Source: Asterias rubens
Lineage: Eukaryota
NCBI RefSeq assembly: GCF_902459465.1
Contig: NC_047069.1
Coordinates: 19,530,001 to 19,594,000 of the forward strand
Length of the DNA: 64,000 nt
Direction of reading: 5' to 3'
In this document: piece by piece, positions 10,070-16,000 of the stretch
Layout: every line of letters starts with the position of its first letter
Position numbering within the stretch: position 1 is the first letter of the stretch
The notes under the pieces: model-generated
Database searches by the model: none
What the model was told of the DNA's origin: nothing
Seen by the model: the letters and a program-made list of their open reading frames with translations, nothing else
Program-made: the position numbers and the translations under genes

Positions 10070-13000
10070 GTAAGTTTTGTTTTCTTCTCTCCCATTCAAA
10101 TAAAATATTACGACAAATTGTTGATTATCTGCACCTTGGTTCTTACTTCTTGCGAATGCGAAGTGAATTTTGAAGTCACATGGCTGTTTTTCGCAGGAGT
10201 TGAACACAGTTCAACAACACAGTTGAACTGTTGCAATTTTTTTTTCTTCGAATTTGTGATGTCAAAATTCATATCCCATTTGCAGGAAGTTCGGACCGGG
10301 CCTTAAAAATGCATGCAGAGAACATTGGTAAAGGTCGGTGACCAGTATCTGCTTTTTATGAGACCCAACATTCTACATAAAAGTTGAATCGGTCATCAGA
10401 GTTTCAAGAAAATAGTGACAAAACAGTTGTGTATGTTTTAACTGTATTTCTGACTCATTCCTAAATTAGTCTTTTTGGTGATTTTATCCCTCTGCCATTA
10501 AAATAAAATATTTTAACAAATTCTTGGGTCATCTAACGCATGCGGAGAACATTGGTAATGGCCAATGAATAGTATCTGCTTTTATGTGACCCAACATAGG
10601 ACTGGGTGACTAGTGCGACTAGTGTTTTCAACCACTCAATTAATTGTGCTGCCACGACTACTACACAAATACTTGCAACTACTTAAAAAATAGTCTCCAC
10701 TACCTGTTTGGTGAACCAATTGTGTCGCTCACGACTATTCAGGACAACATAGTTTATACAATCCGACATCAGTGACACATCCTTCAATTCTGTTAGCGTA
10801 AATTTTACTTTGTGGATTTCACATGCGACAAAAATTATACAGCAATGTCTACTTTAAGCATGTTTGATTGTACAACTTTGATTTGAACTTGGTAAACATA
10901 TCCTTTTGCACTTTTGTGCAATTTTGAATAACACACCTGGCTACTTAGTCTTCACTACGTGCAACATCATCTTTACAACGGCGATGTTCTACAGAAAAAG
11001 AAGACACAAGAAAGAAACACTTAATAAAGTCGATGTTATTTGCTTTAGCCCTACCTACATTGTGATGGTAAGCACTGTTTTATCTGCTTTCTAAATCTGG
11101 CAAAATATTTAAATGCATCATGAGTTGGGTTCGACCCTCTACATTCTGGCGCAGATTTCAAAACTACTAGACTACTGAACTGGTGAAAGAGGCCAGTTGG
11201 CATTCCACAGGAGGTTGTAAGCCTCCCCAAAGAAAAATATTGTAAGGGGGTTCACATCCAATCTTGGTAGTCTAACAAGGGGGTTCCCATTTGACATTGG
11301 GTTCACATCCAACAAGTGGTATTTACATCCAACAAGTGGTTTTATGTCAAACACGAGGTTCTTATCCAACTAGAGGGCACACATCAAACAAAGGGTTCAC
11401 ATTCCAACAAGGGGTTCACATCCAACAGGTCACATCCAGCAAGGGGGAGGGGGTGGGGCTGGGTTTACATCCAACGAGGGGTTTACATCCAACAAGGGGT
11501 GTTGAAATCCAACAAGGGGGTTCACATCCAACAAGGGGTTCACATCCAACAAGGGTTTCACATCCAACAAGGGGTTTGCATCCAACATAAGGGTTCACAA
11601 TTGATAATAGATTAGAACCAAGTCGCTGTTGTCGAGAAGCTCAATAGCTTACGACATATTCTAAGATATTTTGATCTGAATTCTCAGTTCCAAGCAATAT
11701 ATGGGTTACTTACTCTAGTAGCCCTGTAGAGGTCCTCCTCCTCCAATGACTCTCCTCCCTACCCTTTTGTCAAACTTCTTCTTGTGAGTCACAAATATGT
11801 CTTCATCCTTCTGTTCAGGACAAAAAAGTTAAGCGTTCCTTAGCTCTAAAAAAGTTGGAATCAATCAGTAATCAATGCAGGACCAGCACTCCAGCAGCCC
11901 ATTTGATAAAAGTAGAATTATCTGCTTTATTTAAGAGCGGCCTCGAGCACAGTTTCCTATACTGCTTTCTTTTACTTGAACTTGGCTATGATGCCTTATA
12001 ATCGATCTGTTAAGGTACCTTGGGTTCAAGGATATACAGGCACGATAAAGTTAAAGTCTTCTTTGTGCAAATCCATTTGTTAACAATGGCTGTGCACATC
12101 TGTCAATGAGATTTGTTTATAATTTGAACTTCCTTTAATACCTTTGTAAAACTTTTCATATTGATTTTATTTTATTTTTGTAAATTTATTTGTTTAACCT
12201 TCGATAAAGACTCGGTTGTAACATCAGGTCATCAACTCATTGTTGCATTTATACCATATGTCTTTTTTTTTAGTTGGAAAAGTTACTTGGTAACAAGCAA
12301 TAGAGAGCTGTTGATAGTATACAACATTGTGAGAAACGGCTCCCTCTGAAGTAACATAGTTTTTGAGAAAGAGCTAATTTCTCACTCAAATAGTAATAGA
12401 CCTCGGGCCTGAAGCCTTTTATTAGTCATCTGAAATTTTTTCAACAAGTTTTTTGTTCTTTCATTATTCTTTTGCAACTTTGATGACCAATTGAGTCCAA
12501 ATTTTCAGAGTTTTTTGTATGCATGTTGGGATACACCAAGTGCGAACACTGGTCTTTGATAATTACCCACGGTGATCAGTGCCCTTAAGACAGTTCTAAG
12601 CTGCAATTAATTTTCACAGTACCTGGACAGGAGTGATCGCAGCCTCATCTTCAATTTTTTGGTTGATGACCTTCAGAGAAAGATTAAACAAAAAAAGTTG
12701 TTTTTATATATTTAGAGACATGGGAAGGAGGCCAGTCCTCCATTTAAAGGCAGTGGACACTATTGGTAATTACTCAAAATAATAATTAGCATAAAACCTT
12801 ACTTGGTAACGAGTAATGGGGACCTGTTGATAGTATACAACATTGTGAGAAACGGCTCCCTCTGAAGTGCCATAGTTTTCGTGAAAGAAGTAATTTTTCA
12901 CAAATTTGATTTTGAGACCTCAGATTTAGAATTTGAGGTCTCGAAATCAACCATCTAACCGCACACAAATTCATGCGACATGGGTGTTTTTTCTTCCAGT

Positions 13001-16000
13001 ATTATCTCGCAACTTTGACGACCAATTGAGCTCAAATTTGTACAGGTTTGTTATTTTATGCATATGTTGAGATACACCAAATGAGAAGACTGGTCTTTGA
13101 CAAATACCAATAGTGTCCACTGTCTTTAAAAAGGACGAGCAGTCGCCAAAATACATCAATGGGAAAAGTGTATGATGGCGTCTGATAGGTAAAATAGTCT
13201 CCTGTCTTACATGTATTAGTTCAATGCAACAGCACATTGACTACAAAACAGCATACAATACAAAATAGCACATTCACTAAAAGACTGAAGTTAAAGGTCA
13301 CAAAACGTCAGCACAACACCAGGCTGGCTACACACACACACACACCAGTACAAGTGACAATATTTCTGGAATAAAATGAGGATTTGAATACAAGATAATA
13401 CTAAAAGGGCGCTATATTCCTCCGTAGGGAGTAGTATTTGGAGCATGGTAAGAGCCATGCCCCATATAAGATAGAGAGAAATGTCCATCAAAATAAATGT
13501 GCTCCCTCTTGCTCATAATAATGGAAAGGTTGCTGTATTAACAAGTATATATCTGAATCTAAAATTGTCCACTGTATCGTTTGTAAGCTTTGAAAAAGTT
13601 CAGGTAATAATAAATAATAATAATAATAATGGACAGCTCATGGCGCTACTCTACAAAAGAACAACAAGCAATGAAAGTAGCAAACGACAAAATAAGAAAA
13701 TAAACTTTACAAAAAGCTTCTCTATGAAAATGAGTTTTTAAACTGTTCTTGAATGTGTTGAGTGATTTGGAGAGGTTCACAGTGTCCGGGAGGGAGTTCC
13801 AAAGCTTTGGTGCTGCGCTCTGAAAACTTCTCTCCCCCCATACATGTTTAGTTGTTTTTTTCCTGGAGGAGTTTGTGTTTTGCAGACAGTAAGCTACGAT
13901 GTCCTGGGGTGTATATCTACACAAGATCACTTGGGATGGTCTTGCACATTTCTTGGTCTTGCACATTTCCTGAGAGATAACATCTAGTTCTTGTATAGCA
14001 CATTTCGCAATAACTGTCTCAATGCACCTGACATTAGTGCCCTGGTCATTGGGCCAATAACATTCCTTACATCTTTCTCAGCTCCCTGGGGAGTATACAA
14101 CTGGGCAACCATAGCGCTCCAAAGGCTTTTTCAAACACAATATCAACCTCTACCCTCGCTGGTACCAGTTTATACCCCTGGTTGGAGAGAAGCAATTATA
14201 GTAAAGTATCTTGCTCAAAGACACAAGTGTCACGACCGGGATTAGAACTCACGCTCCCATGACTTAACCATAAGAAGTTAAAATCGTTGCTCTTAACCAA
14301 TCGACCGTGACAACCATACTCTATTCATTTAACAAAATTAAAACTAAATGAGCTGTTACAAAATGTCACTGTACCTGAGGAGTGATTGCGGCCTCACCCT
14401 CGGTGACTTGAACTTCAACCTTCAAGATAAAGAGTAAACAAGAAAACAGTATAGAAATATTTACTGCTATGCGGGGCCAGTTAAAGGAACACGTTGCTTT
14501 GGATCGGACAAGTTGGTCTATTTAAAGCGTTTGTAACCATTTTTAAAAAAATGCATATGGTTGGAAAGATGTTTTAAAAGTAGAATATAATGATCCACAC
14601 AAGTTTTCCTTTTACTGTACAAACTAACACGGTCGGCCATTGATGGGAGTCAAAAATTTGACTCCCATAAATTCTTTGTTAAAAACAATTGAGACCCCAA
14701 ATGATATTTAGGTTATAGAGGCCATGTACTGCAATAAAATGTCAGCGTACCTCAACAGGGGTGATCGCAGCCTCATCCTCTGTGACTTGTCCTCTGGCCT
14801 TCAAGATAAAAAGTAACAAATAGTTCCCTGAAATAATGGACAAGATTTTGTATATAGAGGTATATGAATATGTGCATATATGGCTCATTCTTTGCAACTT
14901 GAGTCAAGTTGAGTAAGAGTGTTTTGCAATAATCACACATTTACTTTACTTTGGTAGAATACTGTTTCTAGGTGTTTTTGAAAATCATTTCTTAGTTTTT
15001 GCTTTTGCTACCGGTATTTGCTTAAAATGTTCTTCATTTGAATTTGAGTTGAAACAGAGCCACGTAATTATCATCTCTTACACGCTGTATATATTTAATT
15101 TTTTTAGTGTGAAGAAATTACAGACTTCTTTCTAAAATAGAAGACAACATGGCTGTAGTCAAATTGTCATGCGTTATTTCTGATTGATTTTTTAACAGTA
15201 CTGTACCTCATTTGGGGTCGCCTTTTGGCCCGAATTACTGTAAATCCTCGGCCGAGGTTGAAGTGGTGGTCGCTTCGTAACGCCATTCAAAAAATCTGAT
15301 AAAAACAAACAGAAATTTGAGTTGAAGAAAGAAAACTTTACCAGAGTGGGATTTGAACCAACGACCTCCGGGTAACAATGTGCCTGCACTCTACCAACTG
15401 AGCTGTCTAGCCCTATGTTGGCGGTTGTCCCTTGACTACAATTAGGGCACTGTTTGAACTTTTGATGTCGTGGGAAAGGTCTTTACAAATGTAAGACAGG
15501 TTTGTAAAATAGAAAGGAAGAACTATAAAAAGAAAACAGGACGAAATAAACAGTGACAGAGATACTTACAACCATCCTAGAAATACTACATGTACATGTA
15601 TATCAAAGCTAGACCAATTTTAGTGGTGGTCTTTAAACCCAATTTAGTCCACCAAGGGCTAGCAGTTCAACAAAATTATTCATGTTTAGAAATGGGGCCA
15701 TCATTGCTGAAGTGTAATCTGGGGGAAATCGCTTCTGGGCAGCACAGTGTATTTTGCTCAGAGTGCTGGGCAAAATGTGTTAGTTATGGGCAGGCCCGCC
15801 CAGCACCGCCCACCAGGGGCTACAACACTGGAACTCATAATGAGCGCACCGAACACTGTTTCTAATCAGCAGGGTGTTGGTTTGAGTTTTGATTCTGACA
15901 CTTCTTGAGCATAATTTTCAACATGATTGCTTTGTACTTTGAATGGACATGAACCTAATAGGCCCCATGTATTAGGATTGATGGAAGAGTAGTGGTTAAT

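What the first reader, a model, noticed from the sequence alone, without database searches (positions are those of the whole stretch)
12623..14798. Three duplicated symmetric microexons encode an E(D/G)EAAITP repeat tail on TRIM1
Seen: three similar minus-strand segments, each with a polypyrimidine acceptor (tatcttgaag or tctctgaag) and a gtac donor. They are 14798-14751 ARGQVTEDEAAITPVE (48 nt), 14419-14375 VEVQVTEGEAAITPQ (45 nt) and 12670-12623 VINQKIEDEAAITPVQ (48 nt). All are phase 0-0 and stop-free, and conservation is centred on the exon and its splice sites. The TP motif is a potential proline-directed phosphosite. Inference: an exon-duplication-built repeat whose copy number can be tuned by skipping, replacing the MIB/HERC2 domain of the sister genes.
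Basis: partly seen in the sequence, partly recalled or inferred. Interest (0 to 1): 0.7.

Follow-up and report, generated by a model that had tools for sequence, protein, structure and literature searches.

The report
Duplicated small cassette exons in starfish TRIM tail
Three near-identical 45-48-base exons really are spliced into the mRNA of a starfish (Asterias rubens) TRIM ubiquitin-ligase gene, giving it a short acidic repeat tail where its neighbour genes have a binding domain. This is a tidy, lineage-specific case of ordinary exon duplication that is already in the automatic RefSeq gene models.

Summary
The three minus-strand segments lie exactly where stated, with the stated peptides, AG acceptors and GTAC donors. 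The motif occurs nowhere else in the 417.6-Mb genome.

They are coding exons of an Asterias rubens "TRIM56-like" gene with RING, two B-boxes and a coiled coil. RefSeq isoform X1 (471 aa) contains A+B+C, and X2 (456 aa) skips B. Transcript contigs from two independent runs place exactly 230 nt (89+48+45+48) between exon 1 and the last exon.

It converts exon 1's phase 1 to phase 0, and without it the small exons would hit a stop codon.

The A. amurensis ortholog has four copies, because A is duplicated again. Its models skip A1 and/or C. So copy number differs both between genomes and between isoforms.

Similarity among the copies is confined to an 81-nt block: the exon plus about 15-18 nt on each side. 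The E(D/G)EAAITP core varies at 5 synonymous sites and 1 nonsynonymous site.

The sister genes carry MIB/HERC2 exons, and this gene has no detectable remnant of them. The tail has no established homolog outside Asterias. What the tail does, including any phosphorylation, is untested.

Verdict: real, correctly interpreted in outline, and ordinary in kind.

The parts
16597..17686 (-). Exon 1 coding part (363 codons + 1 nt): RING, B-box1, B-box2 and coiled coil. Donor G|GTGAGT, ends in phase 1.
   Evidence: ORF. Pfam RING and B-box hits. 100% match to RefSeq TRIM56-like X1/X2. Joint 16597->15295 in three runs.
15207..15295 (-). Exon 2, 89 nt, phase 1->0. Encodes (D)FLNGVTKRPPLQPRPRIYSNSGQKATPNE, which is basic and Pro-rich. 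Donor GAG|GTACAG.
   Evidence: Joint skipping 1301 nt with CT..AC ends (GT..AG on the minus strand) in X1, X2 and X9, and the piece 15206-15295 in X2. Present in P0001 and P0007. tblastn.
15316..15420 (-). Dispersed SINE-like repeat ending about 20 nt before the exon 2 acceptor. It supplies much of the pyrimidine-rich stretch upstream of the acceptor.
   Evidence: 1291 first-look candidates genome-wide, the scored copies 86-88% identical over query positions 1-105. Very high contig depth in bin 15300-15499.
14751..14798 (-). Small cassette exon A, 48 nt, phase 0-0: ARGQVTEDEAAITPVE.
   Evidence: Depth in bin 14700-14899 equals contig depth x 49/200 in X1 and X2; in X9 it equals that term plus a small intronic contig. 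Present in RefSeq X1 and X2.
14375..14419 (-). Small cassette exon B, 45 nt, phase 0-0: VEVQVTEGEAAITPQ. Skipped in RefSeq isoform X2.
   Evidence: Present in P0007 and absent from P0001. Needed to make up the 141 nt in the X1 and X2 contigs.
12623..12670 (-). Small cassette exon C, 48 nt, phase 0-0: VINQKIEDEAAITPVQ.
   Evidence: Present in P0001 and P0007. Its A. amurensis ortholog is skipped in isoforms X3 and X4.
14736..14816 (-). 81-nt block of paralog similarity around exon A. Its partner around B is 14360-14437. It covers 18 nt of acceptor flank, the exon and 15 nt of donor flank.
   Evidence: Self-BLAST (77.8% A vs B within A. rubens; 79-84% in the comparisons involving A. amurensis copies). 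Alignment A2. The repeat finder families D6, D8 and D10.
11715..11810 (-). Last coding exon (31 codons + TAG): KDEDIFVTHKKKFDKRVGRRVIGGGGPLQGY, basic. The 3' UTR continues below 11714.
   Evidence: Contig pieces 11714-11810 in X1 and X2..

Best explanation
**What it is (shown).** The three segments are real, tandemly duplicated small cassette exons in the 3' part of an Asterias rubens RING/B-box/coiled-coil (TRIM56-like) E3 ligase gene. The gene sits in a cluster of TRIM paralogs whose tails are MIB/HERC2 domains.

This paralog has a genus-restricted 108-residue tail instead, laid out as charge blocks:
- a basic exon 2 (+3);
- three acidic 15-16-residue repeats (-3, -3, -2), one per exon, with the invariant core E-(D/G)-E-A-A-I-T-P;
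- a basic last exon (+4).

**How it arose (shown and inferred).** Local duplication of a short segment holding the exon and its splice sites built the array before the A. rubens / A. amurensis split. A. amurensis later duplicated a roughly 220-nt segment holding A once more.

**How it is spliced (shown and inferred).** Every unit is a multiple of three and phase 0-0, and every unit has a non-consensus GTAC donor. Any unit can therefore be skipped without breaking the frame. Gene models in both species do this, while the main assembled transcript keeps all copies.

**What it does (inferred, not shown).** The tail is an unstructured multivalent acidic peptide array. Its length, net charge and number of motif copies are set by genomic copy number and by exon skipping. 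It takes the position of the lost MIB/HERC2 substrate-binding domain as the partner-binding or regulatory end of the ligase.
For: - Sequence and coordinates.
- Gene identity and domains: (RING E 1.8e-10, B-box E 4.7e-12). One search gives 100% identity to a RefSeq A. rubens TRIM56-like protein.
- Isoforms: P0007 (X1, 471 aa) holds A+B+C and P0001 (X2, 456 aa) lacks B. The A. amurensis models P0012, P0013, P0002 and P0011 hold 4, 3, 3 and 2 copies.
- Transcripts: X1 record 1 and X2 record 8 span exon 1 to the last exon with 230 nt between them, which equals 89+48+45+48. The joint 16597/15295 has GT..AG ends on the minus strand in three runs. The depth over exon A equals the contig depth in X1 and X2; in X9 it fits once a small intronic contig in the same bin is added. 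One search shows X1 and X2 hold only 5-6% of the intron words, so they behave as RNA.
- Not a dispersed repeat.
- Duplication anatomy.
- Peptide-level constraint: across the 7 copies the 8-codon core has 5 synonymous and 1 nonsynonymous variable sites. My binomial estimate is P of about 0.004-0.02.
- Charge blocks.
- Tail without predicted structure: pLDDT 25-31 and no secondary structure.
- Sisters carry MIB/HERC2 and this gene does not. The Patiria homologs carry PF06701.
- Tail restricted to Asterias: among 5.8 billion protein clusters only the two Asterias orthologs match.
Against: - No function was tested.
- dN/dS between the two Asterias species is about 0.6 for exon 1 and 0.66 for the tail. 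Exons are no better conserved than introns, about 95% each. The gene may therefore be under relaxed constraint.
- The AF2 model is poor overall (mean pLDDT 47, 5-sequence alignment), so 'disordered' is weakly supported.
- Skipping rests on automatic gene models only. The contigs I could lay show only the all-inclusive form.
- The core is purine-rich (GAGGATGAGGC) and could be conserved partly as a splicing enhancer.
Confidence: 0.75

Rival explanations
1. The tail has no function of its own. After the paralog lost MIB/HERC2 it picked up whatever spliceable sequence lay downstream. The duplicated small exons are included simply because each copy carries its own splice sites. The protein acts, if at all, through its RING/B-box/coiled-coil part, for example by pairing with sister TRIMs.
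For: dN/dS is about 0.6-0.66 in both body and tail, and exon and intron identity are equal at about 95%. No domain or homolog was found for the tail. Copy number changes freely between congeners.
Against: Core motif variation is 5 synonymous to 1 nonsynonymous across 7 copies, and the core is unchanged between species. The reading frame is intact in all 7 copies. Outside an 81-nt block the units have lost all similarity, while the exon and its splice flanks kept 78-84%. Contig depth is about 1300-1500 in run X9, which is only a rough sign of expression.
Confidence: 0.2
2. The conserved core is kept mainly at the RNA level. It would be a purine-rich exonic splicing enhancer needed to define a small exon with a weak GTAC donor, rather than a conserved peptide.
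For: The core reads GAR-GRT-GAR-GC in all copies. The donors deviate from GTRAGT at positions +4 and +5. The intron flanks next to the splice sites are conserved too.
Against: Third-position changes accumulate (GCT/GCC, GCG/GCA, ACC/ACT) while the amino acids stay the same. An enhancer alone would not preserve codon meaning. No stable or shared RNA fold was found, with z-scores of +0.5, -0.4 and -0.5. This rival can hold alongside peptide function.
Confidence: 0.1
3. The unit is a fragment of a transposable element or other dispersed repeat that happens to be open, or a gene-model artefact that is not really expressed.
For: The introns are full of SINE-like repeats.
Against: No other copy exists in 417.6 Mb by DNA, pattern or protein search. 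Transcript contigs from independent studies contain the exons.
Confidence: 0.02

Closest known systems
Tandem exon duplication giving runs of similar, frame-preserving cassette exons that each encode one peptide repeat (textbook example from my own knowledge: the differentially skipped PEVK repeat exons of titin)
   Same: Adjacent exons share length, phase 0-0 and similar sequence. Each encodes one unit of an unstructured, charged repeat. Units are dropped individually without a frameshift. Copy number differs between related species.
   Different: The array is tiny (3-4 units) and restricted to one genus. It sits at the C-terminus of a TRIM ligase where paralogs have a folded domain. The copies are not mutually exclusive, because all three occur on one transcript.
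Schistosoma micro-exon genes (MEGs): short exons of 3-81 bp interspersed with long introns, encoding secreted MEG proteins (PMC10526429). Alternatively spliced, intrinsically disordered MEG isoforms are reported in PMC10399815. That their exons are symmetric and that skipping generates the variation is from my own knowledge.
   Same: Small symmetric exons separated by much longer introns, with protein variation produced by skipping whole exons and a product that is probably disordered.
   Different: Here only 141 nt of a 1416-nt coding sequence is built this way. The protein is a cytosolic-type RING ligase for which I saw no sign of secretion. There is no sequence relationship, so this is an analogy and not membership.
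TRIM proteins without a recognised C-terminal domain (the RefSeq name is 'TRIM56-like'), and lineage-specific TRIM cluster expansions such as teleost finTRIMs (PMC2657112)
   Same: RING, B-box and coiled-coil core. A tandem cluster of fast-evolving paralogs. Alternative splicing affects the C-terminal end.
   Different: Relatives carry MIB/HERC2 rather than B30.2/SPRY. No test for positive selection was possible with two species. Pairwise dN/dS of 0.6 is not evidence for diversifying selection.
Neural-type microexons (3-30 nt in PMC9929638 and PMC13627293)
   Same: Short, frame-preserving, alternatively included exons with conserved flanking intron sequence.
   Different: At 45-48 nt these exceed the usual 27-30 nt limit and qualify only under the looser limit of 51 nt or less (my own knowledge). 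They are young duplicates and not deeply conserved.

Membership tests
TRIM / RBCC E3 ligase | N-terminal RING finger | tested here: met
   PF13445 E 1.8e-10 and PF00097 E 1.2e-7, residues 20-63.
TRIM / RBCC E3 ligase | One or two B-boxes followed by a coiled coil | tested here: met
   PF00643 E 4.7e-12 (2 stretches, best 166-202) and an ANCHR-like B-box at 106-145. Long helix 205-306 in the AF2 model, at low to moderate confidence.
TRIM with MIB/HERC2 tail (the sister genes) | C-terminal PF06701 domain | tested here: not met
   tblastn with Patiria MIB/HERC2 tails hits the sister genes at 33952-33833, 46967-46863 and 24734-24645, but nothing between 9000 and 16597. Pfam finds nothing in the tail.
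Tandemly duplicated cassette exons | Neighbouring exons of the same phase and near-equal length with significant sequence similarity | tested here: met
   48, 45 and 48 nt, all phase 0-0. 78-84% identity over 81 nt, E 1e-14 to 1e-20. Motif count is 3 against 0.04 expected.
Tandemly duplicated cassette exons | Exons are spliced into mature mRNA | tested here: met
   Contig-length arithmetic gives 230 = 89+48+45+48 in X1 and X2, and the depth over exon A matches the contig depth.
Tandemly duplicated cassette exons | Individual copies are alternatively skipped | tested here: inconclusive
   RefSeq isoforms lacking B (A. rubens), or A1 and/or C (A. amurensis), exist. No skipped junction could be seen in the contigs laid, and contigs drop minor variants.
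Mutually exclusive exon cluster | Only one copy per transcript | tested here: not met
   All three copies lie on single contigs and in isoform X1.
Microexon (strict, 30 nt or less) | Exon length of 3-30 nt | tested here: not met
   The exons are 45-48 nt. Definitions are in PMC9929638 and PMC13627293.
Schistosome-type micro-exon gene | Most of the coding sequence is made of micro-exons and the product is secreted | tested here: not met
   1090 of 1416 coding nt lie in one exon. The N-terminus runs straight into the RING finger (residues 20-63). Secretion was not formally tested with a signal-peptide predictor.
Proline-directed phosphorylation motif | The T-P threonine is phosphorylated | not testable with these tools
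   T-P is invariant in all 7 copies, but no proteomic data are available here.

The most novel reading that the evidence does not exclude
The acidic 15-16-residue unit would be a functional short linear motif, and the array a new kind of TRIM 'recognition end'. A folded MIB/HERC2 substrate-binding domain would have been swapped for a multivalent peptide array. Its valency and net charge would be adjusted quickly in evolution (3 copies against 4 between congeners) and in the animal by skipping exons.

A further unexcluded twist is that the unit shares an origin with the 15-residue TEDKAAINPEV repeat of an unrelated Trypsin_2-domain protein (P0014). That would make it a repeat module that moves between genes.
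Probability: 0.12. Interest if true: 0.55.

Novelty: new member of a known kind. Interest (0 to 1): 0.3.

Why it matters
This is a clean, datable example of a domain-bearing gene family member replacing its folded C-terminal domain with a tail built by exon duplication. Copy number is still changing between sister species, and every unit can be skipped in frame.

It could serve as a small model for the birth of repeat-encoding cassette exons and for splice-tuned motif valency in an E3 ligase. It does not change any general picture: the exons are already in RefSeq models and the mechanism (tandem exon duplication) is well known.

Tried and rejected
- **Origin of the small exons from exon 2 or the last exon.** The peptide ends look alike (KATPNE|gtac against AITPVE|gtac), but local DNA alignment is no better than shuffles: 84-172 of 500 shuffles reach the observed score. 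Rejected as unsupported.
- **Exon 2 as a remnant of the sisters' first MIB/HERC2 exon** (D-F-L-N-G against D-L-M-F-G). Neither the DNA nor the peptide alignment is significant: 308-792 of 1000 shuffles reach the score. BLASTN between the downstream regions finds only shared transposon fragments.
- **A conserved RNA structure around the exons**, such as selector-type pairing. The z-scores are +0.5, -0.4 and -0.5, and the predicted folds differ between copies.
- **Exon versus intron conservation between A. rubens and A. amurensis.** This is uninformative because everything is about 95% identical.
- **Homologs of the tail.**
  - The search for homologous proteins on residues 364-471 returns only Asterias.
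  - The atlas search gives nothing, and Pfam gives nothing.
  - The exhaustive HMMER search adds P0014 and P0015. P0015 is plainly spurious: a different repeat at 21% identity.
  - P0014 matches in register at about 52% identity. The best single BLAST segment is only 40.8 bits, which by my estimate gives E of about 10 at library scale. The low phmmer E-value comes from summing repeats.
  - P0014's only relative, P0016, lacks the repeat. A. rubens has no P0014-like gene. No DNA was retrievable for P0014.
  - Homology is therefore not established.
- **Transcript contigs encoding exactly X1 or X2 in the assembly index:** none on record.
- **Tree to show that this gene nests inside the MIB/HERC2 clade:** the backbone is unresolved.
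- **ARAGORN on 11000-18000:** it finds no tRNA gene in the SINE-like element.
- **A first attempt at look-up of sequencing runs failed because the machine was busy.** The repeat succeeded.
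Full report
**1. The observation**

On the minus strand the three segments are exactly as described.

| Copy | Coordinates | Length | Peptide | Acceptor flank | Donor |
|---|---|---|---|---|---|
| A | 14798-14751 | 48 nt | ARGQVTEDEAAITPVE | ...tttttatcttgaag | gtacgc |
| B | 14419-14375 | 45 nt | VEVQVTEGEAAITPQ | ...ctttatcttgaag | gtacag |
| C | 12670-12623 | 48 nt | VINQKIEDEAAITPVQ | ...ctttctctgaag | gtactg |

- A degenerate pattern for the core motif hits these three places and nothing else in the window. 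Chance expectation is 0.04, and 0 of 100 shuffles reach 3 matches.
- In the whole 417.6-Mb genome the same pattern gives only these three exact matches. Three further one-mismatch hits are unrelated, and the reversed-pattern control gives 0.
- A 96-nt DNA query of unit A finds only A and B.
- A protein query of the whole tail finds only the local exons.

**2. The gene**

- The 371-aa ORF at 17686-16571 carries a RING finger and two B-boxes.
- Its first 363 residues are 100% identical to RefSeq "E3 ubiquitin-protein ligase TRIM56-like" of Asterias rubens.
- The cluster holds two A. rubens isoforms:
  - X1 (P0007, 471 aa): exon 1, a 30-residue segment DFLNGVTKRPPLQPRPRIYSNSGQKATPNE, then A, B, C, then KDEDIFVTHKKKFDKRVGRRVIGGGGPLQGY.
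  - X2 (P0001, 456 aa): the same without B.

**3. A missed exon**

- Exon 1 is 1090 nt and ends at 16597 before a consensus GTGAGT donor, so it ends in phase 1.
- Spliced directly to A it would read G|GC CAG AGG ACA AGT CAC AGA GGA TGA.
- The frame is restored by an 89-nt exon at 15295-15207, with acceptor ...tttttatcag and donor gag|gtacag.
Another first-stage note on this window (s1-151264) proposed 7-nt and 10-nt microexons to bridge the same phase gap. The transcript evidence below shows a single 89-nt exon instead.

**4. Transcript evidence**

- Runs X1 and X2 come from different studies. They hold 100% and 95% of the exon 1 words but only 5-6% of the words of the intronic stretch 14300-16590, so they behave as RNA.
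- The joint 16597->15295 skips 1301 nt. Its ends are CT..AC on the plus strand, which is GT..AG on the minus strand. It is seen in X1, X2 and X9.
- In X2 record 8 (1679 nt):
  - exon 1 occupies record positions 77-1179;
  - exon 2 occupies 1180-1269, where the last base is ambiguous with the next exon's first G;
  - the last exon (11810-11714) occupies 1410-1506;
  - this leaves 141 nt, which equals 48+45+48.
- In X1 record 1 (1729 nt), 230 nt lie between exon 1 and the last exon, which equals 89+141.
- The mean depth in bin 14700-14899 equals contig depth x 49/200:
  - X1: 18.3 x 49/200 = 4.48, observed 4.49;
  - X2: 35 x 49/200 = 8.57, observed 8.57;
  - X9: 1295.3 x 49/200 plus a small intronic contig = 323.2, observed 323.2.
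- Exon A is therefore covered by the same contig as the rest of the tail. The bins holding B and C are swamped by repeat-derived contigs.
- The dominant assembled transcript thus contains all three copies.
- Skipped forms appear only as RefSeq models. Contigs drop minor variants, so their absence here is not evidence against skipping.

**5. Comparison with Asterias amurensis**

- The orthologous locus is L009 (CP134955.1). It holds four copies, at 12875-12922 (A1), 13300-13347 (A2), 13701-13745 (B) and 15645-15692 (C).
- Its four models contain A1+A2+B+C (487 aa), A2+B+C (471), A1+A2+B (471) and A2+B (455).
- A1 and A2 lie in a roughly 220-nt duplicated segment with 7 mismatches. They are separated by about 200 nt that includes a fragment of a dispersed repeat.
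- Their divergence of about 3% is not clearly different from the species divergence of about 5%. A gain in A. amurensis is likelier than a loss in A. rubens, but this is not proven.
- A, B and C each have a one-to-one ortholog, so the three-copy array predates the species split.
- Exons and introns are equally about 95% identical between the species. That comparison cannot show constraint.
- Pairwise dN/dS is 0.61 for exon 1 and 0.66 for the tail.

**6. Anatomy of the duplication**

- Among paralogous copies, similarity is confined to 81 nt: 18 nt of acceptor flank, the exon and 15 nt of donor flank. Identity there is 78-84%. Beyond this block the units do not align.
- Either the original duplicated segments were very short, or only the exon and its splice signals have been kept.
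- Within the 8-codon core E-(D/G)-E-A-A-I-T-P, the seven copies show five variable synonymous sites (GAG/GAA twice, GCT/GCC, GCG/GCA, ACC/ACT) and one nonsynonymous site (GAT/GGT).
- With about 24-33% of possible changes synonymous, my binomial estimate is P of about 0.004-0.02. This indicates constraint on the peptide.
- The N-terminal six codons of each unit vary freely.
- The core is also purine-rich and could double as a splicing enhancer.
- The donors of exon 2, A, B and C all begin GTAC and depart from GTRAGT. This fits cassette behaviour, which is an inference.
- No stable or shared RNA fold was found.

**7. The tail as a protein**

- Charges run +3 (exon 2), -3, -3, -2 (A, B, C) and +4 (last exon).
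- Pfam finds no family in the tail.
- AF2 gives pLDDT 25-31 and no secondary structure for residues 365-471. The whole model is poor (mean pLDDT 47), so this is weak support for disorder.
- The T-P phosphosite idea is untestable here.
- From general knowledge, T-E-D-E and T-E-G-E in A and B also fit the S/T-x-x-D/E casein kinase 2 consensus. This too is only a lead.

**8. Relation to the sister genes**

- tblastn with the MIB/HERC2 tails of the Patiria homologs hits the three other TRIM genes of the window, at 33952-33833, 46967-46863 and 24734-24645. Nothing is hit downstream of this gene's exon 1.
- The Patiria homologs P0004 and P0005 carry PF06701.
- An earlier follow-up in this scan (s1-150371) reached the same conclusion for the sister genes.
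- A tree of the B-box and coiled-coil region does not resolve the backbone. That MIB/HERC2 is ancestral and was lost here is therefore a parsimony inference.
- I found no significant trace of MIB/HERC2 in exon 2.
- A SINE-like dispersed repeat ends about 20 nt before the exon 2 acceptor and contributes the pyrimidine-rich stretch upstream of it.

**9. Distribution of the tail**

- Among 5.8 billion protein clusters only the two Asterias orthologs match the tail.
- The exhaustive search of 1.84 billion representatives adds P0014. This is an unnamed 708-aa ENA protein with about 20 tandem 15-residue units of the type (V/A)-D-L-R-x-T-E-D-K-A-A-I-N-P-E, followed by a Trypsin_2 domain.
- The match is in register at about 52% identity, but its best single segment scores only 40.8 bits.
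- Its only relative lacks the repeat, and A. rubens has no such gene.
- I treat this as an unexplained resemblance, probably chance or convergence.

**10. Verdict**

- The finding is real, and its interpretation is right in outline.
- In kind it is a small, young, lineage-specific instance of tandem exon duplication producing frame-preserving cassette exons.
- The exons are already present in automatic RefSeq models (XP_033631577.1 and XP_033631578.1).
- Two full-text literature searches aimed at this kind of case returned no paper on it.
- At 45-48 nt the exons are small exons rather than microexons in the strict 3-30 nt sense.

Noticed in passing
window 15207-15295 (-), and the other first-stage note s1-151264 at 15122-15576: The phase gap after exon 1 is bridged by one 89-nt exon, seen in transcript contigs and RefSeq models. 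It is not bridged by the 7-nt plus 10-nt microexons proposed in the other note.
   Followed up: yes
window 15316-15420 (-): A SINE-like dispersed repeat (over 1000 first-look candidates genome-wide, the scored copies 86-88% identical) ends about 20 nt upstream of the exon 2 acceptor and supplies much of the pyrimidine-rich stretch upstream of it. This may be a transposon-assisted 3' splice site. ARAGORN calls no tRNA there.
   Followed up: partly
P0014 (ENA assembly ERZ25072999, 247.5-kb contig; no DNA retrievable): An unnamed 708-aa single-ORF protein has about 20 tandem 15-residue TEDKAAINPEV-type repeats before a Trypsin_2 domain. It matches the Asterias repeat in register at about 52% identity. 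Its one relative, P0016, lacks the repeat. The significance rests on repeat summation, and the origin is unknown.
   Followed up: partly
window 14721-14750, 14345-14374, 12593-12622 (-): About 5-22 nt downstream of each GTAC donor lies a conserved element that looks like a branch point plus acceptor: (c/g)tga(c/a), an A/T-rich stretch, then (g/a)cag. It is too close to the donor to be a normal intron end. It may be a relic of the duplicated unit or a splicing regulatory element.
   Followed up: no
L009 1-26964 (- strand in the locus, so + strand in the window): In the A. amurensis record a 1226-aa gene call (Aminotran_5 and ATP_bind_3 domains) on the opposite strand spans the whole locus. The TRIM cluster may therefore lie inside an intron of a large host gene.
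   Followed up: no
window 47388-48841 (-): The sister TRIM gene here is split into two overlapping ORFs (47972-48841 and 47388-48026). This could be a frameshift or pseudogene, or a short intron in the first coding exon. The sister gene at 34850-36241 has two tandem RING fingers.
   Followed up: no
window 11270-11606: An 18-19-nt tandem repeat array (unit of the type ATCCAACAAGGGGTTCAC, 10 or more copies) lies just downstream of the gene's stop codon, within or beside the 3' UTR.
   Followed up: no
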